Virus record (IMG/VR): IMGVR_UViG_3300042455_001086
Location: 1 to 64,000 of that record
Length of the DNA: 64,000 bases
Direction: 5' to 3' (one strand)
The notes under the pieces are model-generated. The model was not told the DNA's origin, searched no databases, and saw only the letters and a program-made list of their open reading frames with translations. The translations under genes and the position numbers were made by a program. Below are positions 45,653-57,943 of the stretch, piece after piece (the first letter of the stretch is position 1; each line of letters opens with the position of its first letter).

Positions 45653-45789
45653 ACTCTTCAGCTTTCTACTCCCAGCACCGAGGAATTGTATCTAACTTAG
45701 CCCGTCTCACCGCTGTATGGGAACTGAAGTTCATCGTCTTTTTCTTACCGTAAAGATAAACAAAATAAATAATATAAACAATAATGGTG

Positions 45790-46200
45790 TCATAATTTAT
45801 CTGTATTTTCCAAAAGTTCTTTTGCAATCATAGATACTGTTTTATTATCAACAAGTCCTTTATAGTTTTTATTAAACTCACCCATAATCTGTCCGAGATT
45901 GGTCAATCCACTCATTATATATGTGGTAACCTTTTCACGGATTAGATTTTCACTCATCATTTGTGGTAAATATGGTTTAATATATTCCAATTCTTTTAAA
46001 GATTCCGGTGTATTAGTTTGTGTTAAAGATTTTTCCATTTTCTTTAATATACCTAATACCACATCATCAGATGCAATACCTGATCTTCCTTCTTCGTTTT
46101 GGATTTCACCCTTAACAACTCCAAGGAAGTTTTTCTTTTCCATTTCTTTGTTCTTAAATGCTGACATAAAATCGGCATTTATTTGTTCTTTTAATGTCAT
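45790..46200 (-). CDS. GatB/YqeY-domain protein
   Basis: MTLKEQINADFMSAFKNKE...YLPQMMSE...GQIMG. Confidence 0.85.
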   Translation of the reverse strand: MTLKEQINADFMSAFKNKEMEKKNFLGVVKGEIQNEEGRSGIASDDVVLGILKKMEKSLTQTNTPESLKELEYIKPYLPQMMSENLIREKVTTYIMSGLTNLGQIMGEFNKNYKGLVDNKTVSMIAKELLENTDKL

Positions 46201-46379
46201 AATTTTTTTAATTTAAAAAAAAGGTGGAGATTTGTAACCAACATATGATCACCCATATGTCTCGTTTCTTTTGTCTTAGGCACTCCACCATTGCAAGTTC
46301 TTCTTTGCTTGCGCCCCCATTCACGGATTTCCGATTTCCCAATGGGTTTTACCGTCCTATCGGAGTCAGGTAACCGCTG

Positions 46380-46480
46380 AAGTCAGGACCGGATTTGAAC
46401 CGGTATGTCATATATCTGGGCACCCATACGTTGCCCCATTTTGACACTTGTCGTTGCGTCTACCATTCCGCCACCTGACT
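46380..46480 (-). ncRNA. Leu-type tRNA shell with replaced anticodon arm
   Basis: AGTCAGGTGGCGGAATGGTAGACGC ... ACCGGTTCAAATCCGGTCCTGACT. Confidence 0.65.
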
Positions 46481-46589
46481 ATTTTATGATAGTATCATAA
46501 TTGTTATAGCTACACCCAGTACGATTACTGTAAGTAAAGCTACTGCCGCTCTAATAAATGTTTTGTCGTGTTCTTTCATAGTATATGTT

Positions 46590-46988
46590 TTATTCTGGTT
46601 TGTATGTTAAGATCAATGGTGTTCCATTCTCATCTAAAACATTGAAGAATCGTTTTTCTCTAGTGCCATCAAATTCACCAAACATTATTTTGTATACTTC
46701 ATCTTCGTATAGGAGAATGCTTATGTACATTGTTCGGGCTTCAGCTGGTTTCTTAAAGAATCCGAAATCAATGGGATTCACCATTATGTCGTAAACAAAT
46801 CCACTTGTATCAGCACCCAATTTATCAATTACCGTGTTGTATTTAATTATTGCCGCTCGCGGATTGGTGAATCTCATCTCATAGAGATCATATTCATTTT
46901 TCTTGAATCCGCTCATATTACGTAACTGAAACTGACCGATTACCGTACTGGTAACGAGCAAACTAAATGCTAAAATTAATTTTTTCAT
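46590..46988 (-). CDS. Secreted hypothetical protein
   Basis: Signal peptide. Confidence 0.65.
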   Translation of the reverse strand: MKKLILAFSLLVTSTVIGQFQLRNMSGFKKNEYDLYEMRFTNPRAAIIKYNTVIDKLGADTSGFVYDIMVNPIDFGFFKKPAEARTMYISILLYEDEVYKIMFGEFDGTREKRFFNVLDENGTPLILTYKPE

Positions 46989-47004
46989 ATAACTTTTATT
47001 TTTG

Positions 47005-47079
47005 CCGTCAGGAGTGGATTCGAACCACTTACCGATTCAGATTTGAGTACTGTCCGCTCTGCCATTGAGCTACCTGACT
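47005..47079 (-). ncRNA. Aberrant tRNA, anticodon unresolved
   Basis: Normal D and T arms; 3-bp anticodon stem with a 9-nt loop UACUCAAAU. Confidence 0.55.
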
Positions 47080-47088
47080 ATTGTTTTA

Positions 47089-47121
47089 CAAAGATATGTA
47101 TTTTATTTCAATCTACCAAAT
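47089..47121 (-). promoter_or_regulatory. Bacteroidota sigma70 promoter cassette (TTTG-N20-TATCTTTG); copies at 48455 and 48960, variants at 52485 and 54730
   Basis: caaagatatgtattttatttcaatctaccaaat is repeated. Other TAnnTTTG sites: 3199, 30721, 37403, 38489, 38966, 42803, 44273, 52858, 58447, 58861, 60671. Confidence 0.85.
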
Positions 47122-47331
47122 GTTTTTTTTAAAAATAAAAGGGGGAATTAAGGTGTTACCCCCTTTTTGTTTCTGTCGTTTGAAGTTTCGATTTTAGGTC
47201 TTGGAAACCCCATTCGGTAAAAAAAGAGACCGCAGTTTCTGGAAACTTACCTAACCCCAACATTTCTACCTTGTTACTTTAACGTCTCAACAATGGGACT
47301 CACTTGGGCGAGCATCAAAAAAGACGACCTG

Positions 47332-47417
47332 TAGTCAGGACCGGATTTGAACCGGTATTGTTGAATTACCCAGCTTCAACTGCTTAAGTATAGCGTCTAC
47401 CATTCCGCCACCTGACT
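47332..47417 (-). ncRNA. Leu-type tRNA shell with truncated anticodon arm
   Basis: Acceptor, D and T arms identical to 46380-46480; different interior. Confidence 0.65.
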
Positions 47418-47424
47418 ATTTTTT

Positions 47425-47664
47425 TTACTTAGATAATTCAAATTGATAAACACAACTTTGAATTCCCAATTCATTCTTCACCAAATAATCGTGTCTTCCA
47501 GTTTCAATTATTGTGACAGATTCACCTGGTGTAAATCCGGTGTTTTCGGTGTAACAAAAATGAATCTTACACTTTTCACCGATCTTAAATCGTTGTTGGA
47601 TTGGTGTTGAATAACCCCAATTATCGTCAACCAATTTTAATAATTTCCAAAGTAACTTTTTCAT
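47425..47664 (-). CDS. Hypothetical protein
   Basis: ORF track; start taken at MKKLLW, downstream of the tRNA-like element. Confidence 0.5.
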   Translation of the reverse strand: MKKLLWKLLKLVDDNWGYSTPIQQRFKIGEKCKIHFCYTENTGFTPGESVTIIETGRHDYLVKNELGIQSCVYQFELSK

Positions 47665-47680
47665 AATTTTAATTTTTTCG

Positions 47681-47799
47681 TAGTCAGTCAAGGAATCGAA
47701 CCTGTATTCAACCCAATCTCGATGTTGGCATTGTTATTCCCAGCGTCTACCAATCACAGTCAATCCAATTGACATATATGGCTATTCCGCCACCTGACT
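47681..47799 (-). ncRNA. Leu-type tRNA shell with ~30-nt D-loop insertion
   Basis: GGCGGAAT[insert hairpin]TGGTAGACGC; T-loop GGTTCGATTCC. Confidence 0.55.
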
Positions 47800-47899
47800 A
47801 AAAATAAGATTGATTTAGTGGACATATATAATCCCGCCTTGAGCAATTCGTTTCCACTAAGCTTTGACTTTACGGGCTTAGCTTTAAATCAATCTATAC

Positions 47900-47990
47900 G
47901 AGGTTGAGGTCCTCTATGTTGTAAGTTGCCTACCATAAATGGTATCCTTTATCGTCTACTCAAGCAATTCCTTTCTCAAGGGAACAACAC
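47900..47990 (-). ncRNA. Structured RNA motif, copy 2
   Basis: See copy 1 at 45574. Confidence 0.6.
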
Positions 47991-48153
47991 AATAATGTTG
48001 ATAGTGTTGGTGTACCCGCCTATTTCCAATCTTAACTGCCTTTTTAAGTTTTATGGTGCACCGGCAGTGGGCCATATCTATCCTTAACCTACGTAGTTTG
48101 TCGACAACTTCCGTAGAGGCGATCACTATCAATTTTTTCAAAGAACTTTCTTT

Positions 48154-48227
48154 TGGCGGGCTATGACGGTTACAATCCGTCGACTTACGGTAGACAGCCG
48201 TATATGATATCATTTCACCAATAGCCC
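48154..48227 (-). tRNA. tRNA-Asp(GUC), atypical T-loop AUUGUAA, encoded CCA
   Basis: TACGG-CTGTCTA-CCGTA anticodon arm. Confidence 0.85.
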
Positions 48228-48288
48228 AAAATTAACACTTTAAAACCATAGAGGTACAACTTGTGTGTATGTGTTGTTCATTTCATTG

Positions 48289-48362
48289 TAGTCCGTATGA
48301 GAATCGAACTCATGTTGCCGGGATGAAAACCCGGATTCCTGTAACCACTAGAAGAACGGACC
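48289..48362 (-). tRNA. tRNA-Glu(UUC)
   Basis: CCGGG-TTTTCAT-CCCGG. Confidence 0.92.
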
Positions 48363-48648
48363 GTTTAAGATGAGTCGTGGACTTGTGTACCACTTGTCCC
48401 CCTTTAAGTTTCTCACTAACCCCGGATGTAGGGAAACTCACCTTATTTGTCTTACAAAGATATGTATTTTATTTCAATCTACCAAATCTTTTTTTAATTT
48501 TTGTTGAGGATTAATCCTAAATTTTTTCTTTAAGGCCCTTAATAAATCAGTTTTTATGTTAGTTTTAACAAATTTAACCCTTCCTGATTCACAAGTCCCT
48601 GATAAAACTTCCTTCATCATTCATTGTTTTTAATTGTTTATTTTTTGA

Positions 48649-48725
48649 ACTACCCATAGGACTCGAACCTACAACCTTCGGGCCGAAGTAGACCCGTGTG
48701 CAAACCAAATTTACACCATAAGTAG
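48649..48725 (-). ncRNA. tRNA-like RNA with an 8-nt anticodon loop
   Basis: CGGGT-CTACTTCG-GCCCG; intact D and T arms. Confidence 0.6.
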
Positions 48726-48819
48726 TTACGCAAGAAGACAGACAGGAATTAGTGTCGACAAATTTCCTTAGGCTATATGACCCATCTTCTTGTTAGGTTC
48801 GGTTAATTACTCCGAACTT

Positions 48820-48951
48820 TGCTGATTAAAAAGGATTCGAACCAGCGGTTTCAGATTGACATTGAGTACCACAATACTTGTTACTCCGATTTCACGTTCT
48901 TGACTCAATACGCTTCTTATTCAATCTTCCATACTCCCGTCCACCTGACTA
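48820..48951 (-). pseudogene. Degenerate tRNA-like element
   Basis: 5' AGTCAGGTGG and GGTTCGAATCC are retained; the acceptor is unpaired. Confidence 0.4.
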
Positions 48952-48978
48952 TTGTTTAACAAAGATATGTATTTTATT

Positions 48979-49776
48979 TCAATCTACCAAATATTTCTTA
49001 TCCCAATCTTCAATTTTTTTCAAAAGTTCATCAATTGTGATGTCTGATTTTTTATTTTTAGATATATTATCATTATGAATCATCAATCTACAATTTGCGG
49101 GATGAGATATGATTTTTGGATCAATATTATTTTTAAATCCTTCATTTACAGAATAAATATGATCCCTACTTATTCCACCTAAATTGTTACCCCTATTTTT
49201 AGGTTTATACCAACCATATTTCTCAATAAGAGAAAATTCAAATTCACTTGGGAAGTCGGACAAATTAAAATTAAATTTAGAGTCTTGTTTGTATTTGCAA
49301 TATTCCGTCATCAAATGTCTCTCATGTATCCTTCTACATTCAACGCAACAGAATTTATTGTTTCGTTTTTTAAAATTTAATGGTATATCACAATTACTAC
49401 ATTTACTTGGGTTTAATTTATAGTCGTTATACTCATCCAAAATACCTAATCTTTTAAAATTAGATTGGATTATATTTTGTTTACCTTCTTCGGACATATT
49501 ATATTTAAGTCCTTTTTTGTTTACCTGATTTATTACAGATTTACTACATTCTTTGGAACAATATAAATTAAGTCTATTTTCATAATCTATAAAATTTTCG
49601 CATTTTTTACATTTTTTAGGATTTTGTAAATATTTTTCCCTTGAGTTTTTTTTTAAACTTTCTCCTACTTTAGTGTAGTCTCTTAAATTTTTATTTACAT
49701 ATATATTTCTACAAGTTAAAGAACAATATGTATTTTTTTCTTTAATATCTTTACCACAATTTTTACAATTTTTCAT
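48979..49776 (-). CDS. Zn-finger HNH homing endonuclease in the tRNA cluster
   Basis: CxxC..YCS..C repeats; SRDHIYSV..HPANC..N..K. Confidence 0.8.
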   Translation of the reverse strand: MKNCKNCGKDIKEKNTYCSLTCRNIYVNKNLRDYTKVGESLKKNSREKYLQNPKKCKKCENFIDYENRLNLYCSKECSKSVINQVNKKGLKYNMSEEGKQNIIQSNFKRLGILDEYNDYKLNPSKCSNCDIPLNFKKRNNKFCCVECRRIHERHLMTEYCKYKQDSKFNFNLSDFPSEFEFSLIEKYGWYKPKNRGNNLGGISRDHIYSVNEGFKNNIDPKIISHPANCRLMIHNDNISKNKKSDITIDELLKKIEDWDKKYLVD

Positions 49777-49828
49777 ATAAGTATTTATATATAAATATCT
49801 GAATTTGTGGAAAAAGTGAATAACGAAG

Positions 49829-49905
49829 TGGAGGAGGTGGGACTCGAACCCACATAAAACCCTCTCGTTGCAAACGAGCCGCTCAGCCAATTGAGCTACA
49901 CCCCC
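49829..49905 (-). tRNA. tRNA-Ala(UGC)
   Basis: G3.U70; CTCG-TTTGCAA-CGAG. Confidence 0.88.
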
Positions 49906-49911
49906 AAATTT

Positions 49912-50120
49912 CCCCCTCCTGAGATTACAGAGGAGTAGTTAATTCGGTTTTTTCTGTTTCAAAAACCTGCGGGGCATCCCCCATAAAAAAGTCAGTTCTT
50001 ACTTGGGGGTGGGAGAACTTTCCGACCTTATTCCCAATGAGTACTCCGTCACGTAGTAGTACCAGCTCCGTTAAGTTTTTATGAAGAAAACTTAAAAACT
50101 TCGGGCATCTCTTTCCCATT
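49912..50120 (-). ncRNA. ~200-nt structured RNA sharing its 3' motif with the large ncRNA
   Basis: 13-nt identity with 41917-41929; bounded by tRNA-Gly and tRNA-Ala. Confidence 0.5.
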
Positions 50121-50123
50121 TTG

Positions 50124-50194
50124 AGCGGGTAGAGAGAATCGAACTCTCGTCTTCAGATTGGAAGTCTGAAGTAATACCATTATACGATACCCGC
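50124..50194 (-). tRNA. tRNA-Gly(UCC)
   Basis: TCAGA-CTTCCAA-TCTGA. Confidence 0.93.
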
Positions 50195-50409
50195 AAGTTG
50201 TGACAACTTTGGGTTGGTTGTCACATTTACGTGAATGAGGGGATCAATCCTACTAACATCACGGGTATAAGTTCGTCACATCAAACTATTACCAAAAACA
50301 ACGTCAGTTTTTATCCGACAAAACTGATTAAACGACCTGATCTCTTGTTACCCCCCTTTTAAGTGCGTGAACTCCTTCTCAAGTTGAACTCTACTGTATA
50401 CACTCCCAG

Positions 50410-50483: not shown

Positions 50484-50488
50484 ATAGT

Positions 50489-51115
50489 TTATTTTTTTCT
50501 TCTGTAAACCTCACCTTTATAGTGTTTATCAACAAATCTTTTTACTTGTGAATGTGTTAAACCTAAAATATCAGATACTTTTTTTACCCACCCATACGTT
50601 GTCATATCAACACCTTTAATTAAATCTAACCTTTCACTAACAATATCTTCAGTCAATTTATTAAAACCACCGAATTTATCACCCATTTTTTTTGCATTAT
50701 TAATTCTAAATTCTAAAGGTACCGATTCCCAAGTTTTTTTTCTTTTTTCTTTGTTATCCCACGAGCCGGCAATACTTCCATATTTTAATCCGTGTAACCG
50801 TCTTTTTTCTTCTGTCCAATAATTTTTATTTACATGATCAAAAGAACCTAAACCACCCAAAGAAATGTTATATGTGTTTTTATTAGTTACAAAACTTTCA
50901 TTAACTATTTCACTTTCCATCTGAAACATTTGTGTTGGGTTGTCGAATATTGCTAAATATTTTTTATCAAAGTTATTAATCCCGTATTTTTTAATAGCAT
51001 CTTTTATGTTTTTTCCAGAACCCATATACCCATCGTTAATATTATCAGTTTTATGTACACCAACATAAATCTTACCATTAACTTTATTTCTTATTTCATA
51101 AACTATGTATTTCAT
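50489..51115 (-). CDS. GIY-YIG homing endonuclease (Seg-like)
   Basis: YIVYEIRNKVNGKIYVGVH...YMGSG...E...YNISLGG. Confidence 0.88.
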   Translation of the reverse strand: MKYIVYEIRNKVNGKIYVGVHKTDNINDGYMGSGKNIKDAIKKYGINNFDKKYLAIFDNPTQMFQMESEIVNESFVTNKNTYNISLGGLGSFDHVNKNYWTEEKRRLHGLKYGSIAGSWDNKEKRKKTWESVPLEFRINNAKKMGDKFGGFNKLTEDIVSERLDLIKGVDMTTYGWVKKVSDILGLTHSQVKRFVDKHYKGEVYRRKK

Positions 51116-51378
51116 TTTGAACCTCCGTTTATATATAAATATAACGATAGTTCAAAAAATGTCAGTCTTTCCTGACCGTCACCCCTAACCCACAGGTATG
51201 AACCCGTATTGTAGTAAAGCTTGGTTAGCTATAAAGTAAGGATGAACACGGGCCTAGCAAGCCATCTTTCAGGAAAGGCCCTTCCACCTATTCATCCTAT
51301 TATTAAAAGTTTCGTTAAAAAGGTTTAGAAAACATACTTTTTTACAAAACCAAGATATTTATATATACACTTTTTAAT

Positions 51379-52062
51379 ATGAAAACACTATTCACAGAAG
51401 AAGAATATAAAAATTCAAAATCAACATCTAAATTACCTTGTGAATGTTTACTATGTAAAAAATCATTTCTTGTTGAAAAAAAACTAATAACTTATGAATT
51501 AAAAAATAATCGTAATCGTCATATCTATTGTTCTACCGAATGTTATTATAATGCTCAAAAAGTATTACCAATAATTTTTAAATGTAAAAATTGTAATTGT
51601 GAGTTTGACAGAAAAGAATCCTCAAATAAAAAAGATTCTTCTGGTAACTATTTTTGTTCTCAATCGTGTTCGACCACATTTAATAATAAAAACAAAACAC
51701 ACGGAAATCGACGCTCTAAACTTGAAATTTGGTTGGAGGACCAATTAAAAGTTATTTATCCCAACCTTCCAATCGACTTTAATAAAAAAGAAGTTATCGG
51801 TTCTGAATTAGACATTTATTTCCCAACACTTAATTTTGCAGTAGAATTAAATGGTATTTTTCATTATGAACCTATCTATGGTATAGATAAGTTAAATAAA
51901 ATCCAAGAAAACGACCAATCTAAAACTAAACTTTGTCACGATTTAAAAATAGACCTCTGTATTATTGATGTTTCGGAACAAAAATATGTCAAACCCTCAA
52001 CATCAAAAAAATACCTTGATATTATCACCAATATTGTCAATGAACGTTTGTTAATCTCTTAG
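51379..52062 (+). CDS. Zn-finger PD-(D/E)XK endonuclease, antisense to the tRNA operon
   Basis: CxxC/FCS..C; RSKLE..ELDIY..AVELNGIFH. Confidence 0.75.
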   Translation: MKTLFTEEEYKNSKSTSKLPCECLLCKKSFLVEKKLITYELKNNRNRHIYCSTECYYNAQKVLPIIFKCKNCNCEFDRKESSNKKDSSGNYFCSQSCSTTFNNKNKTHGNRRSKLEIWLEDQLKVIYPNLPIDFNKKEVIGSELDIYFPTLNFAVELNGIFHYEPIYGIDKLNKIQENDQSKTKLCHDLKIDLCIIDVSEQKYVKPSTSKKYLDIITNIVNERLLIS

Positions 52063-52118
52063 CCGGCTTTACCCGTTTCCAACAATCACCTCGTGGCGGT
52101 GGATTAACTCCGATTGTT

Positions 52119-52190
52119 TAGCGTGTTGTGGACTCGAACCACCCCGTAGACGTTATGAGCGTCCCATGCAACCAATTACACCTTCACGCG
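52119..52190 (-). tRNA. tRNA-Met(CAU), initiator-like
   Basis: C1xU72 mismatch; GGACG-CTCATAA-CGTCT; lacks the three consecutive G-C pairs. Confidence 0.75.
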
Positions 52191-52195
52191 ATATG

Positions 52196-52302
52196 TAGTC
52201 AAAGAAGGATTCGAACCTATCACGAGATAAGTGTGAAATTCACCTTATCCCAAGGACTTTTGAGTATTGTGTCCCAGCGTCTACCAATTCCGCCACTTGA
52301 CT
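52196..52302 (-). ncRNA. Leu(CAA)-like tRNA with a 13-nt anticodon loop and extended V-arm
   Basis: GGGAC-ACAATACTCAAAA-GTCCT. Confidence 0.6.
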
Positions 52303-52525
52303 GTTTTTTGTAGTTTAGTAGTTAGATTAAACTCTCGTTTCACTATCTTAATCTAACAGGTTGATACACTTAACGAGTTTCCCGTTTCTTACAACCACAA
52401 TATTTCTAATTTCAATGAACTTCCTTCCTTTTTCTGGAGGTGGGGTTACCATCCCTAACTTCCCCACCTCCGTTGTTTGTTTTACAAAGATATGAAGAAT
52501 TTTTTAATCTACCAAATCTTTTTTG

Positions 52526-52817
52526 TACTTGGAGCGGGAATCGAACCCGCACGGGCAAATGCCCACAGGATTTTCTTACCACTATAGTTTTCACTACCAA
52601 CCAAATTGTTGTTTGTGGTCTGGACTATACCTTAACCTTATCTTTTTAGACTTAGGTTCTCCGTGTCTAGTCTCTACACCTTACTCATTTCTGAGTCTTG
52701 GCTCGGTATTCCCATTTTAAAAGGTTCACCGAATTTACGGAGTTCTACTCAGAGGGTTTCCACTCTGGCACTCAAATTATATAAGTCCGGCGTGTCTACC
52801 TATTCCACCACCCAAGC
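52526..52817 (-). tRNA. tRNA-Leu(UAA) interrupted by a group I intron
   Basis: Exon 1 ends GGACTT and exon 2 begins AAAATCC; long V-arm. Confidence 0.92.
52575..52782 (-). mobile_element. Group I intron (IC3-like, 208 nt) at U^AA
   Basis: AAATTCGGTGAA (P), AATACCGAGC (Q), GTAGAGACTAGAC (R), GTATAGTCC (S), terminal G. Confidence 0.92.
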
Positions 52818-52900
52818 ATTTTACCAATATGTCAAAGAACCTTTGTCTTTTGTTTTACAAATATAAAAACTTTTTTTCAATTACACAATACCCTTAAACG

Positions 52901-52929
52901 AAAAAACCCCTCTTTTTTGGAGAGGGGTT
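52901..52929 (-). terminator. Attenuator terminator A
   Basis: AACCCCTCT/AGAGGGGTT stem plus U-tract. Confidence 0.85.
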
Positions 52930-52955
52930 CATTTTAATTTTGTATGTATAAAATA

Positions 52956-53091: not shown

Positions 53092-53598
53092 TTAATCTTC
53101 AATACTATCAAGTAATTCCACAACAGCATCTACTGATTTTTCTAACGCCTTTAAATTTCTTATTGTTACATCATCTTCTACCAAATCTTCTAAATCCCTA
53201 ACTTTATCATAAGCAGATTCCAAGTCATTTAATATTTCATTAAGATCTATATCGTAATCTTCAAAATCACTTTTATGAAGTTTAACATCTTTTTCTTTAT
53301 AAGATTTAACTAATTGTTTAATAGTGCTTAATGTTTTTTTCATTTTAATAAAATCATCCATCAACCCTTCAGCAACTTTATATTGACTATGTTCAAAAGA
53401 ATCGCCTTTTATCATTGTTTTTAATTTACCAAATGCGATCATCATTCTACCAATACCATTGAATAATCCCATAGTAATGTTGTTTGCGGTTTTTCTGACT
53501 TTCAAATCTTTTTTTACACTTTCATAACCACCTTCGTTGATTACTCTTTTAACAATTCTTGTTAAATCTGATTCTGTTAATCTTATTACTTTTTTCAT
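53092..53598 (-). CDS. LTESDL-leader protein
   Basis: MKKVIRLTESDLTRIVKRVINE. Confidence 0.7.
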   Translation of the reverse strand: MKKVIRLTESDLTRIVKRVINEGGYESVKKDLKVRKTANNITMGLFNGIGRMMIAFGKLKTMIKGDSFEHSQYKVAEGLMDDFIKMKKTLSTIKQLVKSYKEKDVKLHKSDFEDYDIDLNEILNDLESAYDKVRDLEDLVEDDVTIRNLKALEKSVDAVVELLDSIED

Positions 53599-53767
53599 AA
53601 TGTTATTTAATTATTTTATTATTAAGTTTCCCCAAATGTTAATCATTTTTTTAATTTCATCTTCAGTATAAATATCAAATACTGGTAAATTTTTCATTTC
53701 TTTTTATTTATAATAAATATTCAACTTTTCAATTATTAATGTATTTATTGGTTAAATACATAATATT

Positions 53768-54277
53768 GTGAAACGAACAATAAGACTAACCGAATCTGAA
53801 TTAATTAATGTAATTCAACGAGTAATTGAAGAATCAAAAGGTGGAAATTTGATGGAAGATGTCAGACTTTTATTTGTCACAATGAATCTTTTTATTCCTT
53901 TAATTGAAAAAGATGGAAAAAAATCATTAGATTACAATGGTGAGATTAAATTTTCTATACCAAAAACTAAAATGGAACAAGACCCTAAAAAAACTGGTTC
54001 GTGGTGGGACGGAAAAAAAGTTAAAAACCTAAGTATTGACATCGCTGGTGATGAGAAATATATGATATTAAAAGAACTTACAAACGACACTAATCAAATT
54101 TCTGGTGTTGGTCCTAGGGTTAGTGAAATTGTTAGACCAAACTCAAATGGTTCATCTGCTCTTTTTGGTTTAATAGGTAAACAAATTGATGGTACAAAAA
54201 ACAAACGTACACAAGTTAATTTTAATGATGGTCTAGTATATGGTGTCGTTAATTTTATAGCAAAACCAACCCAGTAA
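53768..54277 (+). CDS. LTESEL-leader protein
   Basis: MKRTIRLTESELINVIQRVIEE (GTG start). Confidence 0.7.
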   Translation: MKRTIRLTESELINVIQRVIEESKGGNLMEDVRLLFVTMNLFIPLIEKDGKKSLDYNGEIKFSIPKTKMEQDPKKTGSWWDGKKVKNLSIDIAGDEKYMILKELTNDTNQISGVGPRVSEIVRPNSNGSSALFGLIGKQIDGTKNKRTQVNFNDGLVYGVVNFIAKPTQ

Positions 54278-54700
54278 CTAGGATGGTTTTATTATTTCAA
54301 AATTTGTCATAACATTTATTTCCGTTAATGAAGAATAAAAAACATAACGTGTAACGGATTCGTTTTTAATATCGGTGTTTACAATCAACCCATAATCAAA
54401 TCCCTCCTCCAAGATTTCAATTTGAAATTGTGTTTGGTTTAATTTAATTATATTGATAGGTAAAACTGAAACAAGTTTGCCGTTTCTGTAAAATGAGGAT
54501 GTTTTTTCATCAAAATCAATAAGATATTGAGTGTTTACAACATCATTTGACACCAAAGAAGAATTCTCTAATAAAACTTTAAGATTTTTTGACTCAGAAT
54601 ATGAGTAAAAGGTGTTTGATTCCTGAATTTTTATTATCAATTTTTGTGAGAATGAAAATGTCGAAATAAGTAAACCAACTAAAAGAATTAAATTTTTCAT
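54278..54700 (-). CDS. Secreted hypothetical protein
   Basis: Signal peptide ending SFSQ; host-type promoter at 54730. Confidence 0.65.
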   Translation of the reverse strand: MKNLILLVGLLISTFSFSQKLIIKIQESNTFYSYSESKNLKVLLENSSLVSNDVVNTQYLIDFDEKTSSFYRNGKLVSVLPINIIKLNQTQFQIEILEEGFDYGLIVNTDIKNESVTRYVFYSSLTEINVMTNFEIIKPS

Positions 54701-54782
54701 AAATTTTGTTTTTATATTAGTTATATCAACAAAGATATGTACTTTATTTTAATCTGCCAAATTTTTTTCAAACTTTTTTTTG

Positions 54783-54856
54783 TACCCCCAGCAGGACTCG
54801 AACCTGCAAAAATATGAGCCTAAATCATACTCGTATGCCAATTCCGACATAGGGGC
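54783..54856 (-). tRNA. tRNA-Leu(UAG), short variable loop
   Basis: TATGA-TTTAGGC-TCATA. Confidence 0.85.
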
Positions 54857-54868
54857 GTTTTTTTTTTG

Positions 54869-54953
54869 AGTAAGTGGCCAGATTCGAACTGACGTAAGAC
54901 TTTCGTCTATCGGTTTTGCAGACCGACGGTTTCAACCGCTCACCCACACTTAC
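54869..54953 (-). tRNA. tRNA-Cys(GCA) with a long variable arm
   Basis: TCGGT-CTGCAAA-ACCGA; U73; AGAC-GAAA-GTCT V-arm. Confidence 0.8.
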
Positions 54954-54956
54954 ATA

Positions 54957-55412
54957 TTAACGGCAGTGGTGATCTGCCGCTCTTGTTGCAATTTGATTAT
55001 GGGGTTTTATATTTGTTTTATACCCCAATGACATTGCCCATCCTGTTGCCGGTTGAACCAACTTTGAACTAAAATGTTTATCATCACTATTATAATCCAA
55101 ATCTATTTCAACTTTAACACTAACTTTTTGTGTTAGCCATTCAGCAACTTCAATTGAATAATCGGCCTCATTCCATAATCGTGTCCATTTGTCTTTTACT
55201 TTTTTCACTTTTTGTTTGTGGTAAATATAGTGGACACCTCTATTACCATACCTATATGCTATTGCAGTTACATAAACAGTACTTCTTCTATGATTTTGAG
55301 AATCAGTTCCTATGTGAACCTCAGCCCAGGGACAATCTTTAAGAATGTCTATTGTATGTTTTACAATGTCTGACACAGGTTCACCAGTGACTTTTCTGAA
55401 TACTCTGTTCAT
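54957..55412 (-). CDS. RNase H-like YkuK (DUF458) family protein
   Basis: IGTDSQ..YVTAI..RL..E...S...IDLD.N...A..AAD. Confidence 0.8.
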   Translation of the reverse strand: MNRVFRKVTGEPVSDIVKHTIDILKDCPWAEVHIGTDSQNHRRSTVYVTAIAYRYGNRGVHYIYHKQKVKKVKDKWTRLWNEADYSIEVAEWLTQKVSVKVEIDLDYNSDDKHFSSKLVQPATGWAMSLGYKTNIKPHNQIATRAADHHCR

Positions 55413-55434
55413 TTTAGTTAATTTTAATTGTTTG

Positions 55435-55509
55435 TGGAACCCAACCGATTCGAACGGTTACCTTCTGATCTTCAGTCAGACGTGACACACCTGCTTACAC
55501 CAGGGTTCC
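55435..55509 (-). tRNA. tRNA-Phe(GAA)
   Basis: TCTGA-CTGAAGA-TCAGA. Confidence 0.88.
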
Positions 55510-55515
55510 TTTTAG

Positions 55516-55587
55516 CGCAAAACTTCCGAGTCGAACAGAAATTTGATGGTTTGGAATCATCCGTGTTAGCCATTACACTAGTCTTGC
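55516..55587 (-). tRNA. tRNA-Trp(CCA)
   Basis: GATGA-TTCCAAA-CCATC. Confidence 0.85.
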
Positions 55588-55625
55588 AGTAGTGCCCGAC
55601 CTAGCTCGGGACCGACATCGGATTG

Positions 55626-55699
55626 TACCCCCACCAAGATTCAAACTTGGATAAAACATCTTAGAAGGATGTTGCATTATTCAATTATGCTATGGAGGC
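55626..55699 (-). tRNA. tRNA-Arg(UCU)
   Basis: ACATC-CTTCTAA-GATGT. Confidence 0.88.
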
Positions 55700-55881
55700 A
55701 AATAAAAGATGATAAATGACTTTATCAGGAATCTGGGATTCGTATTTCTACGACGCTTCACACACCATTAGAGAGTTGGGTTATTACATCAATACAATTA
55801 AGATTGAATACCTATCCTTAGTGTGTACCCTTGCGACACGTCTCTCCACGTCTGTCATTCTACGCTTTGTATCATCTTTTG

Positions 55882-55954
55882 TATCCTCGGAGAGATTCGA
55901 ACTCCCATCTTATGGTCCGTAGCCATAGGTTCTTCTCCGTTGAACTACGAGGAT
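55882..55954 (-). tRNA. tRNA-Arg(ACG)
   Basis: TATGG-CTACGGA-CCATA. Confidence 0.9.
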
Positions 55955-55960
55955 ATGTTG

Positions 55961-56034
55961 TGTGTATGATGGGTCACGATCCCATGGCCTCCACTTTCAC
56001 AGAGTGGTACTCTACCAACTGAGCTACATACACC
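55961..56034 (-). tRNA. tRNA-His(GUG)
   Basis: CCACT-CTGTGAA-AGTGG; T-loop AUCGUGA. Confidence 0.87.
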
Positions 56035-56040
56035 ATGTTG

Positions 56041-56108
56041 TCCCGTATGTTGGACTTGAACCAACCTCAAGTCGGATATGAGCCAACTTTGATCCCTGAT
56101 CATACGGG
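56041..56108 (-). tRNA. tRNA(CAU) Met with a minimal D-arm
   Basis: AGTTGG-CTCATAT-CCGACT; D-arm GATC-AGG-GATC. Confidence 0.7.
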
Positions 56109-56114
56109 TTGTTG

Positions 56115-56198
56115 CGGAAGACATTGGAATCGAACCAAATACCCGAAGGTACATCTCGCTTAGCAGGCGGACCCTATCGCCATCAAGGTTTATCTTCC
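56115..56198 (-). tRNA. tRNA-Ser(GCU), 8/4 fold
   Basis: GGAAGATA/TGTCTTCC acceptor; 4-bp T-stem. Confidence 0.82.
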
Positions 56199-56202
56199 GT
56201 AG

Positions 56203-56279
56203 TCGGCACAGTAGGAATCGAACCTACATGGGACCTATTAACCTTTCAACCGCGTATCAGGCGGAGGGTATATGTACCG
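56203..56279 (-). tRNA. D-armless tRNA-Ile(GAU)-like RNA
   Basis: CGGTACA/TGTGCCG acceptor; CCGC-CTGATAC-GCGG only 8 nt after the acceptor; canonical T-arm. Confidence 0.65.
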
Positions 56280-56447
56280 TGGTACGTATTTAGGGGTATT
56301 TCTTAACCACCCCCCTCAGCTCGTCAGCATCTCGGTGGTCGATACTTTAGTCGTGACGAACCCATCTGTCACTTCTTACTAGATTCTTGTGGCTTACTTA
56401 CCTAGGTTTAATCCGTTACCACTACAGGGAGCCCAACATTGTATCTT

Positions 56448-56523
56448 TGGCGGACAAGGTAGGGTACGATCCTACACCTTTCATATTAACAGTATGACGC
56501 TCTCCCAATTGAGCTACTTGTCC
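56448..56523 (-). tRNA. tRNA-Asn(GUU), encoded CCA
   Basis: TCATA-CTGTTAA-TATGA. Confidence 0.9.
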
Positions 56524-56527
56524 AGTG

Positions 56528-56608
56528 TGGAAGTGGTAGGGTTCGAACCTACACGCCTTTCGGACTTGATTTACAGTCAAGCGAGCCAGCCAATTGCTCA
56601 ACACTTCC
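56528..56608 (-). tRNA. tRNA-Tyr(GUA)
   Basis: CTTGA-CTGTAAA-TCAAG. Confidence 0.9.
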
Positions 56609-56614
56609 TTATTG

Positions 56615-56688
56615 TACACCCTACAGGGATCGAACCTGTGACCTGTTGTATGTAAAACAACCGCTACTACCATCTGAGCTAAGAGTGT
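56615..56688 (-). tRNA. tRNA-Val(UAC)
   Basis: GTTGT-TTTACAT-ACAAC. Confidence 0.9.
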
Positions 56689-56842
56689 GTAAAGATAATA
56701 CTTTTTTTTAATTATTCAGACATTTTCTGAATTTTTTTAAGAATCCCTTCGTTGGTACTCGTCGTTTCTATAGTCGTCACTTTCCCCGTTTTTGTTTTTT
56801 AAGTGTACTTCCCTACTGGGACTTGAAGTCAACACTTGTTTG

Positions 56843-56916
56843 TGTCCCCGGTGAGACTCGAACTCACACTCTTTCCATTAAAAGTGGAAAGCTTTAACCA
56901 GTTAAGCTACGAGGAC
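56843..56916 (-). tRNA. tRNA-Lys(UUU)
   Basis: TTCCA-CTTTTAA-TGGAA. Confidence 0.92.
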
Positions 56917-56956
56917 TTCTGTTTGTCATACTTGTCACTTTCCATAACACTTATTT

Positions 56957-57733
56957 TTATTTGTTTATTATTTCATTTAATTGGTTAATTAAGTAATTAA
57001 CATCACCAAAAATTATTTTATATTTTTTTGATACAACTTCCATTTTTTCTTTATCTAACACCAAACAATGTGGGTTTTTAGGATCCAAAAATAAATCATA
57101 TTTAGGGAGATAAAAGTCTGGATAATATAATTTATTTTTACCATTACTATTCACCCACTTTAATGGTTTAGGTCTAACCCAATCTACATTTTTTTCATCA
57201 AGGTACATCGCAACCTCTAACTCCCAAGTAGATTCTAAAGTCACATTTTTGTATTTTATAGTTTTTCTACTACCATTTCTGTATTTTCTACTTGTTGACG
57301 CTTCAATTCTACAATGTTCGGAACAAGTAACTTTATTACTATAATTTCTTTGTGTGAATAATTTATTACAAATTTTACAGTTAGTGTATTTTATTTTACA
57401 AGTTCCAAATTTTATAGTTTTAGATAATGATAATAAAATTTTATCTCTTGTTTCTTGTGATAAAGTCCTACCTACCAATGTTTTTGATATTTTATCTTTT
57501 GTTTCTTCATTACGCCTCCCTCTTTTTATGTTATTATATGTTGCCGCACAAGAATTACCACAAAATTTGTTTCTTTTTTTGTAGAAATCTAAATCACAAT
57601 CACATTGTAAACATTTATTTGGGTTTTTATAATATTCATCTCTTATAAGTTTTTTATTATTCTTAATAACTTCTACCGCAATTTTTTGTGCTTTTAATGC
57701 GTTTTCATAATGTCCAACATATAGTTCTTTCAT
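56957..57733 (-). CDS. Zn-finger/NUMOD3 PD-(D/E)XK homing endonuclease in the tRNA cluster
   Basis: CxxC, ETKDKIS repeats, ESTWE..YYPDFYL..LDPK. Confidence 0.78.
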   Translation of the reverse strand: MKELYVGHYENALKAQKIAVEVIKNNKKLIRDEYYKNPNKCLQCDCDLDFYKKRNKFCGNSCAATYNNIKRGRRNEETKDKISKTLVGRTLSQETRDKILLSLSKTIKFGTCKIKYTNCKICNKLFTQRNYSNKVTCSEHCRIEASTSRKYRNGSRKTIKYKNVTLESTWELEVAMYLDEKNVDWVRPKPLKWVNSNGKNKLYYPDFYLPKYDLFLDPKNPHCLVLDKEKMEVVSKKYKIIFGDVNYLINQLNEIINK

Positions 57734-57801
57734 AATCTACTTTCTATATAAATATCTCAAAAGTCAAAAAAAGTTAGTCGAACCTATAAATTATTTATCG
57801 T

Positions 57802-57874
57802 TGCAAGTGCCGGATTCGAACCGTTCTTGAATGTCCCAAACATCCCGTGCTCACCTGTTTACACCACACTCGCA
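57802..57874 (-). tRNA. tRNA-Pro(UGG)
   Basis: GGATG-TTTGGGA-CATTC. Confidence 0.8.
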
Positions 57875-57943
57875 ATAAAAATCAATACCCTGACTCCTTT
57901 CGAGTTTTGGAGGACTCGTATCATTCATTCTGTATTGATTTAG

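What the first reader, a model, noticed from the sequence alone, without database searches (positions are those of the whole stretch)
45655..57940. Nearly every inter-tRNA spacer is a discrete closed-stem RNA
Terminal inverted repeats bracket 45656-45729, 46223-46289, 47807-47895, 48366-48445, 51239-51298 (loop complementary to downstream UCAGGAAAG), 52310-52399 and 57880-57940 (H-type pseudoknot potential). Other spacers are GC-rich and ORF-free (46290-46378 and 47165-47330, both with CCCAUU/AAUGGG; 50197-50408; 56290-56445). This suggests a polycistronic array of small RNAs cut out by tRNA maturation.
Basis: partly seen in the sequence, partly recalled or inferred. Interest (0 to 1): 0.6.

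Follow-up and report, generated by a model that had tools for sequence, protein, structure and literature searches.

The report
Small structured RNAs between phage tRNAs
A giant lake-water phage carries, wedged between its tRNA genes, about a dozen conserved, intricately folded small RNA genes that no RNA family database lists and whose function is unknown; trimming of the neighbouring tRNAs probably sets them free.

Summary
The window is the start of a 257-kb, 30% GC jumbo phage from lake water. Its tRNA array lies on the minus strand. Folding energy of single sequences is only weakly better than chance (z -0.5 to -2.4), but related phage contigs settle the matter. Elements A, B, H, E, F and J, and a 181-nt RNA at 55700-55880, are conserved modules with compensatory base changes, for example A with 12 of 22 pairs and 97.8% of cells paired against 46% or less in slid controls. 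In other phages they sit in tRNA-sized slots 0-7 nt from varying tRNA neighbours. None matches any Rfam 15 family. A is a 74-nt double pseudoknot. The 181-nt RNA has a pseudoknot and a tetraloop-receptor-like motif, occurs in at least 119 viral contigs, and stands alone with its own terminator in Bacteroidales MAG contigs. "Nearly every spacer" and "one polycistron" are overstated. The array also holds homing-endonuclease ORFs, at least six Bacteroidota-type promoters, terminators, aberrant tRNAs, a group I intron in tRNA-Leu(UAA), and an HDV-like ribozyme next to tRNA-Met. No RNA-level data were available, so release by tRNA processing is inferred and function is unknown.

The parts
45656..45729 (-). 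Element A: 74-nt RNA. It has an 8-bp closing helix, a central two-part hairpin, and two pseudoknots (CCC:GGG and AUUC:GAGU) between the 23-nt apical loop and both strands of the internal loop.
   Evidence: 98 matches and 54 distinct sequences. 97.8% of cells paired against 46% or less in slid controls. 12 of 22 pairs are compensatory, including one pseudoknot pair (C-G to U-A in 13 sequences). 14 of 29 unpaired columns are invariant. No Rfam match.
45589..45653 (-).
   Evidence: Fold z -1.34. No homologue found in 99 loci. Unverified.
46223..46289 (-). Element B: 67-nt closed hairpin RNA with a 7-bp closing stem, an A-rich internal loop and a covarying apical hairpin.
   Evidence: Present in 21 loci, always 1 nt after H. 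Compensatory changes occur in the closing stem and the apical hairpin.
46290..46378 (-). Element H: three consecutive hairpins, including the CCCAUU/AAUGGG stem. It starts directly after a Leu-like tRNA.
   Evidence: H+B alignment of 13 sequences: 11 of 43 pairs compensatory. In other phages H-B-A are contiguous; here the YqeY ORF (45790-46200) sits between B and A.
46380..46480 (-). Leu-like tRNA that ARAGORN missed. Acceptor, D and T arms are intact; the middle part is aberrant.
   Evidence: Rfam tRNA model, 37.8 bits, E 4e-6.
47177..47330 (-). Element I: 154-nt GC-rich RNA after the Leu-like tRNA at 47331-47417. It has a CCCAUU...AAUGGG long-range stem and is followed by a hairpin plus U-run terminator at 47129-47176.
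   Evidence: Found in 7 loci, 5 distinct sequences, 1 compensatory pair. The terminator hairpin is seen.
47807..47895 (-). Element C: 89-nt RNA with an 11-bp closing stem, directly upstream of a Leu-like tRNA with a D-loop insertion (about 47680-47800).
   Evidence: Fold z -2.40. Only one near-identical homologue, so conservation of the structure is untested.
48366..48445 (-). Element D: 80-nt closed-stem RNA starting at the predicted transcription start of a promoter repeat and ending 3 nt before tRNA-Glu.
   Evidence: Found in 7 loci, 5 distinct sequences, 2 compensatory pairs, none broken. The promoter copy at 48438-48494 overlaps its first bases.
50197..50408 (-). Element J: roughly 212-nt multi-helix RNA that fills the gap between tRNA-Ile(UAU) and tRNA-Gly(UCC).
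   Evidence: Found in 27 loci, 17 distinct sequences, 17 of 33 predicted pairs compensatory. Gaps to the flanking tRNAs are 0-5 nt in other phages.
51239..51298 (-). Element E: 60-nt closed-stem RNA with an invariant UUUCCUGAAAGA loop.
   Evidence: Found in 22 loci, 5 of 16 pairs compensatory. It lies 5-6 nt after tRNA-Met(CAU) in other phages.
51160..51238 (-). Module after E (sp51116): roughly 79-nt RNA ending in the hairpin GUCAGGAAAGACUGAC.
   Evidence: Found in 25 loci, 5 compensatory pairs. It occurs without E, directly after tRNA-Met, in 14 loci.
52050..52118 (-). HDV-like (theta-type) self-cleaving ribozyme candidate abutting the 3' end of tRNA-Met(CAU) at 52119-52190.
   Evidence: Rfam HDV-F-prausnitzii model, 29.4 bits (gathering score 44), E 0.0045, full-length alignment. 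The homologue in L017 keeps P4 through a compensatory change.
52310..52399 (-). Element F: 90-nt RNA with a covarying 9-bp hairpin, an invariant 19-nt loop and possible CUCGU:ACGAG pseudoknot. It lies 7-13 nt upstream of a Leu-like tRNA (52196-52302).
   Evidence: Found in 48 loci, 25 distinct sequences, 5 of 12 hairpin pairs compensatory. The closing stem changes compensatorily by eye. The pseudoknot is invariant and so untested.
52527..52836 (-). tRNA-Leu(UAA) split by a 208-nt group I intron (52575-52782) between U34 and A35. This is not a spacer RNA.
   Evidence: Rfam Intron_gpI, 53.7 bits (gathering score 50), E 1e-12. Exons were read. DNA contigs of other runs skip exactly 52574-52781.
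55700..55880 (-). The 55700 RNA: a 130-215-nt family. It has a 10-bp closing helix, a junction of P2, P3, P4 and a variable hairpin, a GGAGAG:CUCUCU pseudoknot, a CUAAG/UAUGG receptor-like motif, and two variable hairpins often capped by GNRA loops.
   Evidence: 33 distinct sequences, 96.2% of cells paired against 65% or less in slid controls, 10 of 31 pairs compensatory, P2 6 of 6. At least 119 IMG/VR contigs. 97 of 116 copies have a tRNA within 30 nt. It also occurs in 5 Bacteroidota MAG contigs, in some as a stand-alone gene with a terminator.
56290..56445 (-). Element K: 156-nt GC-rich RNA between tRNA-Asn and tRNA-Ile(GAU).
   Evidence: Found in 13 loci, 6 distinct full-length sequences, 3 compensatory pairs. 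Gaps to the tRNAs are 2-11 nt in other phages.
57880..57940 (-). Element G: 61-nt RNA with a 9-bp closing stem and an inner hairpin whose CCUC loop could pair with the downstream GGAG. It sits between tRNA-Ser(UGA) (57945-58029) and tRNA-Pro.
   Evidence: Fold z -2.27. Three other contigs hold it with the same neighbours and one compensatory change in the inner hairpin. The pseudoknot is untested.
52468..52524 (-). One of at least six copies of a roughly 50-nt promoter-like repeat (TTTG, 20 nt, TAtcTTTG on the minus strand). Other copies are at 47072-47128, 48438-48494, 48943-48999, 54713-54769 and 60654-60710.
   Evidence: Direct-repeat families D1 and D2. The match to the Bacteroidota -33/-7 consensus rests on my own knowledge.

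Best explanation
The region is the tRNA gene array, on the minus strand, of a 257-kb lake-water jumbo phage that probably infects Bacteroidota. Interleaved with about 33 tRNA and tRNA-like genes are at least ten unrelated families of small RNA genes of 60-215 nt. Each family folds on its own, and most are closed by a terminal helix.

The proposed mechanism has three steps.
- The RNAs are transcribed together with neighbouring tRNAs from several phage promoters.
- They are released as discrete molecules when host RNase P cuts at the 5' end of the next tRNA and 3'-end processing cuts after the previous one. The tRNAs encode no CCA, so RNase Z is the likely 3' enzyme.
- The terminal helix brings the two cut ends together and shields them from exonucleases, so the RNA persists.

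The invariant loops and the pseudoknotted, receptor-containing cores indicate a sequence-specific job in trans, such as binding a protein, an RNA or a small ligand. The company they keep (tRNAs, tmRNA, GOLLD, YqeY) points to translation or tRNA biology.

What is shown: conserved structure, modular placement in tRNA slots, and the coding strand. What is inferred: co-transcription, excision, stability and action in trans.
For: Structure is under selection:
- A: 12 of 22 pairs compensatory, 97.8% paired against 46% or less.
- 55700 RNA: 10 of 31 pairs, 96.2% against 65% or less.
- H+B: 11 of 43. J: 17 of 33. E: 5 of 16. F: 5 of 12.

The strand is that of the tRNAs, since G.U pairs far outnumber A.C pairs.

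Unpaired nucleotides are as conserved as paired ones. In A, 14 of 29 unpaired columns are invariant; in the 55700 RNA, 34 of 81.

The modules are portable. They keep 0-7 nt junctions to tRNAs while the neighbours change. In this phage, ORFs have been inserted between modules that are adjacent elsewhere.

The 55700 family also exists as a free-standing gene with its own closing stem and intrinsic terminator in Bacteroidales MAG contigs. This shows it is a gene in its own right.

Each element is single-copy in the genome, and indels are not multiples of three, so the elements are neither repeats nor coding.

There is a precedent. T4 RNAs C and D are small RNAs of unknown function (PMC9697503). 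Their position in the T4 tRNA cluster and their release by RNase P are from my own knowledge.
Against: There is no transcript evidence at all. The runs that clearly hold this DNA are DNA metagenomes, and the one labelled RNA-Seq held 6% of the words and was judged probably DNA. The array has internal promoters and terminators, so some elements may be 5' leaders (D) or 3' ends (I, sp51116) rather than tRNA-flanked inserts. In this window A, B, C and E do not directly abut tRNAs on both sides. C, G and A2 have too few relatives for a test. Single-sequence folding energies are unremarkable. No target, partner or ligand is known.
Confidence: 0.6

Rival explanations
1. Passive structured spacers. 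The closed stems only insulate neighbouring tRNAs from misfolding, or present the junctions to RNase P, Z or E. After cleavage the pieces are discarded.
For: Junctions to tRNAs are tight. Closing stems bring the upstream tRNA's 3' end next to the downstream tRNA's 5' end. Many arrays in related phages lack a given element.
Against: Half of the unpaired positions are invariant across 33-54 distinct sequences. The pseudoknots, the receptor-like motif and the 130-215-nt size far exceed what an insulator needs. The 55700 family also occurs away from tRNAs with its own terminator.
Confidence: 0.15
2. One or more elements (A, E, sp51116, G, the 55700 RNA) are new classes of self-cleaving ribozyme. 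They would make tRNA ends in the array, as the neighbouring HDV-like ribozyme is thought to do.
For: An HDV-like ribozyme sits in the same array 0 nt after tRNA-Met. In other phages the slot after tRNA-Met holds E or sp51116 instead, and A follows tRNA-Leu(UAA) by 9-18 nt. Theta ribozymes are mostly next to tRNA-Met, suppressor tRNAs and tRNA-Leu (PMC10879173). A is a compact 74-nt double pseudoknot with many invariant junction nucleotides.
Against: No hit to any Rfam ribozyme family at E up to 5. The topology of A differs from both twister and HDV, judged by eye. Closed 5' and 3' ends are not typical of ribozymes that cleave at their own 5' end. No cleavage data exist.
Confidence: 0.12
3. Cis-regulatory leaders or attenuators for the downstream ORFs or tRNAs: B for YqeY, sp51116 for the GIY-YIG gene, D for tRNA-Glu.
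For: B ends 22 nt before the YqeY start. sp51116 ends in a weak terminator-like hairpin before the GIY-YIG gene. In one MAG a truncated 55700-type RNA plus terminator lies upstream of a class I aminoacyl-tRNA synthetase gene.
Against: In related phages the same elements have other downstream neighbours, or tRNAs, and the ORFs are absent. No element is consistently paired with a particular gene.
Confidence: 0.05
4. DNA-level features: miniature inverted-repeat mobile elements, homing-endonuclease target sites, or decayed tRNA pseudogenes.
For: Terminal inverted repeats of 7-11 bp. Homing endonuclease genes lie in the array. Arrays are mosaic between phages.
Against: Each element is single-copy in the genome. 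The inverted repeats covary instead of being conserved. The excess of G.U pairs shows a strand-specific RNA. No tRNA-model hit and no T-loop.
Confidence: 0.03

Closest known systems
Bacteriophage T4 RNA C and RNA D (species 1 and 2 stable RNAs of the T4 tRNA gene cluster)
   Same: Both are small non-coding RNAs of unknown function encoded by a large virulent phage (PMC9697503). From my own knowledge, the T4 RNAs lie inside the tRNA cluster, are co-transcribed with tRNAs and are released from precursors by RNase P. The T4 tRNA cluster also harbours a homing endonuclease gene (segB), as this array does.
   Different: There is no sequence similarity: searches against 50,697 GenBank phage records found nothing. 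This array holds ten or more families rather than two. Several have pseudoknotted cores, and at least one (the 55700 RNA) also occurs in bacterial MAG contigs.
Theta (minimal HDV-like) ribozymes next to phage tRNAs (Kienbeck et al. 2024, PMC10879173)
   Same: Both are small structured RNAs placed within a few nucleotides of the 3' end of phage tRNAs, especially tRNA-Met and tRNA-Leu. The array contains one HDV-like candidate of this kind at 52050-52118.
   Different: They are closed by a 5'/3' terminal helix, which the HDV fold is not. The phage uses the standard genetic code, so no recoding role is implied.
GOLLD and ROOL RNAs (large ornate phage and prophage RNAs near tRNA islands)
   Same: Both are structured non-coding RNAs of unknown function encoded by phages 'often near tRNA islands' (bioRxiv 10.1101/2024.12.08.627333). 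A GOLLD RNA lies 3 kb from this array.
   Different: GOLLD and ROOL are 400-800 nt and form multimeric cages. The present RNAs are 60-215 nt, belong to unrelated families, and sit inside the array between individual tRNAs.
tRNA-punctuated release of other RNAs (mitochondrial punctuation, plant tRNA-snoRNA units, MHV68 tRNA-miRNA, mascRNA)
   Same: The logic is the same: tRNA-processing enzymes cut out whatever lies between or beside tRNA structures (own knowledge). Several Leu-like tRNAs here keep acceptor, D and T arms but have aberrant anticodon arms, as expected of processing handles.
   Different: Those systems are eukaryotic or organellar. Processing here has not been demonstrated.
Candidate structured RNAs predicted from IMG/VR (Fremin et al. 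2023, PMC10690425)
   Same: That survey predicted 8,495 unnamed 29-151-nt motifs from the same collection in which these elements abound. Some may coincide with A, B or E.
   Different: Overlap could not be checked, because no supplementary files are held. The paper's text does not describe families interleaved with tRNAs in arrays.

Membership tests
   No tRNA-model hit overlaps any of the eleven intervals, even at E up to 5-10 on short stretches. ARAGORN finds none there either. Other gaps did hold missed tRNAs: 46380-46480, 52119-52190, 52196-52302, 56116-56279 and 57945-58029.
Known self-cleaving ribozyme classes (hammerhead, twister, twister-sister, pistol, hatchet, hairpin, HDV-like) | Match to the family covariance model (conserved core plus helices) | tested here: not met
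   The only ribozyme hit in the array is the HDV-F-prausnitzii model at 52050-52118. Elements A-K and the 55700 RNA give nothing.
Known self-cleaving ribozyme classes | Site-specific self-cleavage | not testable with these tools
   This needs in vitro transcription assays.
HDV-like / theta ribozyme (for 52050-52118 only) | Nested P1, P2, P3 and P4 helices with a J4/2 cytosine, and a score above the family threshold | tested here: inconclusive
   Full-length alignment at 29.4 bits, against a gathering score of 44. P1 AACAAUC/GAUUGUU, P2 GUUAAUC/GAUUAAC, P4 CGG/CCG and J4/2 GCUAAGA can all be read. P4 is kept by a G-C to A-U change in L017.
HDV-like / theta ribozyme (for 52050-52118 only) | Cleavage site within +/-5 nt of a tRNA 3' end | tested here: met
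   The ribozyme's first base (52118) directly follows the discriminator base of tRNA-Met(CAU) at 52119.
T4-type tRNA-cluster stable RNAs (RNA C/D) | Encoded inside a phage tRNA gene cluster on the tRNA strand | tested here: met
T4-type tRNA-cluster stable RNAs (RNA C/D) | Sequence or structure homology to T4 RNA C/D | tested here: not met
   Distant blastn of A+A2, J and the 55700 RNA against GenBank phages found no match.
T4-type tRNA-cluster stable RNAs (RNA C/D) | Co-transcription with tRNAs, release by RNase P, and stable accumulation | not testable with these tools
   No usable RNA run was available.
Group I intron (for 52575-52782) | Match to Intron_gpI above threshold, a U.G pair at the 5' splice site, a terminal G, and insertion in a tRNA anticodon loop | tested here: met
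   53.7 bits against a gathering score of 50. Exon 1 ends ...GGACUU, the intron ends in G, and exon 2 starts AAAAUCC. Intron-less DNA alleles skip exactly these 208 nt.
Miniature inverted-repeat transposable element | Multiple copies per genome with conserved terminal inverted repeats | tested here: not met
   Each element is single-copy in the 257-kb genome. The terminal repeats change by compensatory substitutions.
Intrinsic terminator | GC-rich hairpin directly followed by a U-run | tested here: not met
   None of the seven closed-stem elements is called. Terminator-like sites lie elsewhere, at 47129-47176, 52904-52930 and 58233-58261, with a weak one at the end of sp51116 (51161-51178).

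The most novel reading that the evidence does not exclude
At least one of the compact, pseudoknotted elements is a previously unknown class of catalytic or tRNA-binding RNA. The candidates are A (the 74-nt double pseudoknot), E or sp51116 (which occupy the same slot after tRNA-Met as the HDV-like ribozyme), and the 55700 RNA (junction, pseudoknot and tetraloop-receptor-like motif). Such an RNA might be a new self-cleaving ribozyme that makes tRNA ends in phage arrays. If so, the array would be a natural cluster of ribozymes: a group I intron, an HDV-like ribozyme and new classes.
Probability: 0.15. Interest if true: 0.85.

Novelty: new variant of a known kind. Interest (0 to 1): 0.65.

Why it matters
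Phage tRNA arrays are usually annotated as tRNAs plus filler. Here the filler is a set of ten or more conserved, complex-folded RNA families that are absent from Rfam 15.

If these RNAs are released by tRNA processing, this would be a natural prokaryotic version of the tRNA-punctuated expression that synthetic biology uses for guide-RNA arrays. It would also revive the 50-year-old open question of what T4 RNA C and D do, with far more comparative data.

Compact pseudoknotted RNAs with invariant junctions, sitting beside a group I intron and an HDV-like ribozyme, are good candidates for new ribozyme or ligand-binding classes. The elements are short, so cleavage and processing assays are cheap.

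Tried and rejected
- **Rfam.** All eight Rfam searches, including permissive scans of 0.8-2.5 kb, gave no family for any listed element.
- **GenBank phages.** Near and distant blastn found nothing beyond one 56-nt tRNA-like hit to a 642-kb uncultured phage.
- **RNA evidence.** The look-up of sequencing runs returned lake-water DNA metagenomes. One run labelled RNA-Seq held 6% of the words and was judged probably DNA. Read laying on 6,000 bases therefore showed only contigs, with no ends or strand information.
- **E loop pairing.** Long-range pairing of the E loop with UCAGGAAAG downstream was rejected as a conserved feature. The two modules occur separately and both motifs are invariant.
- **Hand-fitting known folds.** I tried to fit A, E and sp51116 to HDV-like, twister, hammerhead, hairpin-ribozyme and k-turn patterns by eye. 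None fits. This is inference, not a formal test.
- **Alternative genetic code.** Rejected. The standard code already gives 97% coverage by frames of 100 codons or more.
- **Closed-stem enrichment.** The shuffling test is only marginal: 34 against 23 +/- 4.7.
- **A core pattern scan.** The replacement pattern is loose and returned many chance matches, so hits were filtered with nhmmer and then with a covariance model.
- **Overlap with published candidates.** Overlap with the IMG/VR candidate RNAs of Fremin et al. could not be checked, because no supplements are held.
- **C, G and A2.** Too few homologues for any conclusion.

Full report
**Setting**

The window is the first 64 kb of a single 257,166-bp contig with 30% GC. 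The standard genetic code already gives 97% coverage by frames of 100 codons or more. It encodes a major head protein, a portal protein and a large terminase. Near-identical DNA is held by lake-water metagenomes. This is therefore a jumbo phage from fresh water.

ARAGORN finds 24 tRNA genes, all on the minus strand between 45454 and 61069. Rfam adds a GOLLD RNA at 41915-42325 and a tmRNA at 38524-38914.

**What lies between the tRNAs**

The array is not tRNAs plus spacers. It contains several other kinds of feature.

- **Protein genes.** These are a YqeY-like protein (45790-46200), a GIY-YIG endonuclease (50489-51115), HNH-type endonucleases (51379-52062 on the plus strand, and about 48979-49770), and an RNase H-like PF04308 protein (54957-55412).
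- **Promoters and terminators.** A roughly 50-nt repeat occurs at least six times. On the minus strand it reads TTTG, 20 nt, TAtcTTTG. From my own knowledge this fits the Bacteroidota -33/-7 promoter consensus. Terminator-like hairpins lie at 47129-47176, 52904-52930 and 58233-58261.
- **tRNAs that ARAGORN missed**. Their anticodons were read by eye from the sequence. They are Ser(UGA) at 57945-58029, Ser(GCU) at 56116-56198, Ile(GAU) at 56203-56279, a Met(CAU) with a tiny D loop at 56034-56115, Met(CAU) at 52119-52190, and several Leu-like paralogues.
- **A split tRNA.** tRNA-Leu(UAA) at 52527-52836 carries a 208-nt group I intron. DNA contigs of other runs lack exactly these 208 nt.
- **A ribozyme candidate.** An HDV-like element at 52050-52118 starts at the base after tRNA-Met.

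So "nearly every spacer" and "a polycistronic array" are overstated.

**Checking the observation**

All seven terminal inverted repeats are present. Taken one sequence at a time they are not impressive. Fold z-scores run from -0.5 to -2.4. A count of closed stems of 7 bp or more in the non-coding parts is 34, against 23.0 +/- 4.7 in dinucleotide shuffles.

The decisive evidence is comparative. Two array proteins served as handles to fetch 99 related loci from IMG/VR. Motif scans then added about 230 more loci. nhmmer finds A in 35 of the first 99 loci, B and H in 21 each, E in 22, the module after E in 25, F in 48, J in 27, K in 13, D and I in 7 each, C in 2 and G in 1. It also finds an unlisted 181-nt spacer at 55700-55880 in 31 loci. 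Every hit is on the tRNA strand.

**Covariation**

| Element | Distinct sequences | Cells paired | Best slid control | Compensatory pairs |
|---|---|---|---|---|
| A | 54 | 97.8% | 46% or less | 12 of 22 |
| 55700 RNA | 33 | 96.2% | 65% or less | 10 of 31 |
| H+B | 13 | not counted | not counted | 11 of 43 |
| J | 17 | not counted | not counted | 17 of 33 |
| E | 11 | not counted | not counted | 5 of 16 |
| F hairpin | 25 | not counted | not counted | 5 of 12 |

For A, six of the eight closing-helix pairs are compensatory. For the 55700 RNA, all six pairs of helix P2 are. D, K and I have few sequences but show 2, 3 and 1 compensatory pairs. G has one. C cannot be tested.

G.U pairs greatly outnumber A.C pairs: 11.0% against 0.2% in A, and 6.9% against 2.1% in the 55700 RNA. 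The structures are therefore RNA structures of the minus strand. Unpaired positions are as conserved as paired ones, with 14 of 29 invariant in A and 34 of 81 in the 55700 RNA. Indels are not multiples of three.

**Anatomy of the two best-sampled families**

Element A is 74 nt. It has an 8-bp closing helix and a central two-part hairpin. Its 23-nt apical loop pairs with both strands of the internal loop next to the closing helix. One of these pairings is CCC with GGG. The other is AUUC with GAGU, in which one pair switches from C-G to U-A in 13 sequences. A is thus a compact double pseudoknot.

The 55700 RNA has a 10-bp closing helix and a junction of P2, P3, P4 and a variable hairpin. The P3 hexaloop GGAGAG is complementary to an invariant CUCUCU. 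A CUAAG/(U/A)AUGG motif flanking P4 resembles the 11-nt GAAA-tetraloop receptor; that resemblance is from my own knowledge. Two variable-length hairpins are often capped by GNRA loops.

Variable hairpins grafted onto a fixed core are typical of RNAs with a defined three-dimensional fold.

**Placement**

In related phages the modules sit in tRNA-sized slots with 0-7 nt junctions:

- Arg(ACG)-1-[55700 RNA]-1-Arg(UCU)
- Ile(UAU)-0-[J]-4-Gly
- Asn-2-[K]-3-Ile(GAU)
- Met-5-[E]-5-[sp51116]-7-Ile(UAU)
- [H]-1-[B]-28 to 90-[A]
- Leu(UAA)-9 to 18-[A]
- [D]-5-Glu

For the 55700 family, 97 of 116 further copies have a tRNA within 30 nt, and the neighbours vary widely. In the present phage, the YqeY and homing-endonuclease genes have been inserted between modules that are adjacent elsewhere.

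It is also found in five Bacteroidota MAG contigs. In a Schleiferiaceae contig it lies between tRNA-Ser and tRNA-Tyr. In Tannerella and Tannerellaceae contigs it is a stand-alone gene with a different, complementary closing stem (UCCGGC/GCCGGA) and its own intrinsic terminator. This shows that the family is a gene in its own right. Together with the promoter type, it also points to Bacteroidota hosts.

**Comparison with known families**

No element matches any of the 4,227 Rfam 15 families, even in permissive scans of short stretches. None has a relative in 50,697 GenBank phage records.

- **T4 RNA C and D** are the nearest precedent. They are small RNAs still described as being of unknown function (PMC9697503). 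From my own knowledge they lie in the T4 tRNA cluster and are released by RNase P.
- **GOLLD and ROOL** are phage RNAs "often near tRNA islands" (bioRxiv 10.1101/2024.12.08.627333).
- **Theta ribozymes** are minimal HDV-like ribozymes next to phage tRNA-Met, suppressor tRNAs and tRNA-Leu (PMC10879173).
- **A survey of IMG/VR** predicted 8,495 unnamed candidate structured RNAs (PMC10690425). Some may overlap these elements, but this could not be checked.

**Mechanism**

I propose that the RNAs are co-transcribed with tRNAs and are freed by RNase P and tRNA 3'-end processing. The tRNAs encode no CCA. The terminal helix would define and protect the ends, and the invariant cores would act in trans.

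One side observation fits this. Several Leu-like tRNAs keep acceptor, D and T arms, which are the parts that processing enzymes recognise, but have aberrant anticodon arms. One has a conserved 13-nt loop with a covarying stem. They may serve mainly as processing handles.

Conserved structure, strand and placement are shown. Transcription, cleavage, stability and function are inferred, because no RNA data could be obtained.

**Rivals**

- **Insulating spacers.** These are unlikely given the invariant loops and complex cores.
- **New self-cleaving ribozymes.** This reading is not excluded. In other phages E or sp51116 occupies the slot after tRNA-Met that the HDV-like element fills here, and A follows tRNA-Leu(UAA). 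These are the tRNAs that theta ribozymes favour.
- **Cis-regulatory leaders.** These do not fit the changing neighbours.
- **Mobile DNA elements or decayed tRNAs.** These are excluded by single-copy status, covarying rather than conserved termini, and the wobble-pair asymmetry.

**Verdict**

The families are absent from Rfam and from cultured phages, and they are common in lake phages. The kind of thing, small RNAs embedded in phage tRNA clusters, has a precedent. I therefore rate this a new variant of a known kind, with a real but minority chance that it hides new ribozyme or ligand-binding classes.

Noticed in passing
window 52527-52836 (-), intron 52575-52782: tRNA-Leu(UAA) is interrupted by a 208-nt group I intron between U34 and A35, the same site as the cyanobacterial and plastid tRNA-Leu intron. 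DNA contigs of other lake runs carry the intron-less allele with exactly these 208 nt missing. ARAGORN calls intact Leu(UAA) in many related loci.
   Followed up: yes
window 52050-52118 (-): An HDV-like (theta-type) ribozyme candidate starts at the base after tRNA-Met(CAU). It scores below the Rfam threshold (29.4 against 44 bits), but all helices can be read. The P4 helix is kept by a compensatory change in L017, where it follows a quite different tRNA-Met.
   Followed up: partly
window 52196-52302, 46380-46480, 47331-47417, 47004-47079, about 47680-47800, 48647-48726, 45454-45546 (-): A set of tRNA-like genes, mostly Leu-like, has normal acceptor, D and T arms but abnormal anticodon regions. 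One has a conserved 13-nt loop AYAAUACUCAAAA with a covarying stem. Others have a 9-nt loop, an 8-nt loop (ARAGORN anticodon 'actt'), a roughly 27-nt insertion in the D loop, or form a 93-nt 'tRNA-Cys'. They could be processing handles, decoys, or tRNAs altered to escape anticodon nucleases.
   Followed up: partly
window 41915-42325 (-) and 38524-38914 (+): A GOLLD RNA (321.6 bits) and a phage-encoded tmRNA (110.2 bits) lie just outside the tRNA array.
   Followed up: no
L221, L224, L225, L222, L223 (Bacteroidota MAG contigs): The 55700-type RNA occurs in contigs binned to Schleiferiaceae, Crocinitomicaceae, Tannerellaceae, Tannerella and Candidatus Symbiothrix. In L225 it is a stand-alone gene with its own terminator next to an AbiEii-like ATPase gene. 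In L224 a 3'-truncated copy plus terminator lies between an HTH gene and a class I aminoacyl-tRNA synthetase gene.
   Followed up: partly
window 47072-47128, 48438-48494, 48943-48999, 52468-52524, 54713-54769, 60654-60710 (and a weaker copy at 52841-52897): A repeated roughly 50-nt element reads TTTG-N20-TAtcTTTG on the minus strand. This fits the Bacteroidota promoter consensus and suggests both the host phylum and several transcription units within the array.
   Followed up: partly
window 45198-45231, 49784-49815, 51128-51159, 57741-57772, 58400-58431: A second repeated AT-rich motif of about 30 nt lies 8-15 nt upstream of minus-strand ORF starts inside the array. It contains TATAAATA when read on the plus strand. 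It may be a second promoter class or a translation-initiation region.
   Followed up: no
window 54957-55412 (-): An RNase H-like protein (PF04308/DUF458) is encoded between tRNA-Phe and tRNA-Cys. It is conserved at 61-98% identity inside the tRNA arrays of 67 IMG/VR contigs, which makes it a candidate array-associated nuclease.
   Followed up: no
G000:C1 ends (window 1-127 and contig 257040-257166): The contig ends are a perfect 127-nt inverted repeat of each other. This is most likely an assembly artefact (k-mer-length hairpin end) rather than real terminal repeats.
   Followed up: partly
window 14400-18422 (-) and 19487-22492 (-): The portal ORF (1,340 aa) carries an HNH endonuclease domain in its N-terminal third. 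The large terminase ORF is unusually long at 1,001 aa. These may reflect inteins or fused endonucleases.
   Followed up: no
window 52434-52471 (-): A 10-bp GC-rich hairpin (GGAGGUGGGG...CCCCACCUCC) lies directly after the predicted start of the transcript that carries F, the Leu-like tRNA, tRNA-Met and the HDV-like element. It may be a protective 5' stem-loop.
   Followed up: no
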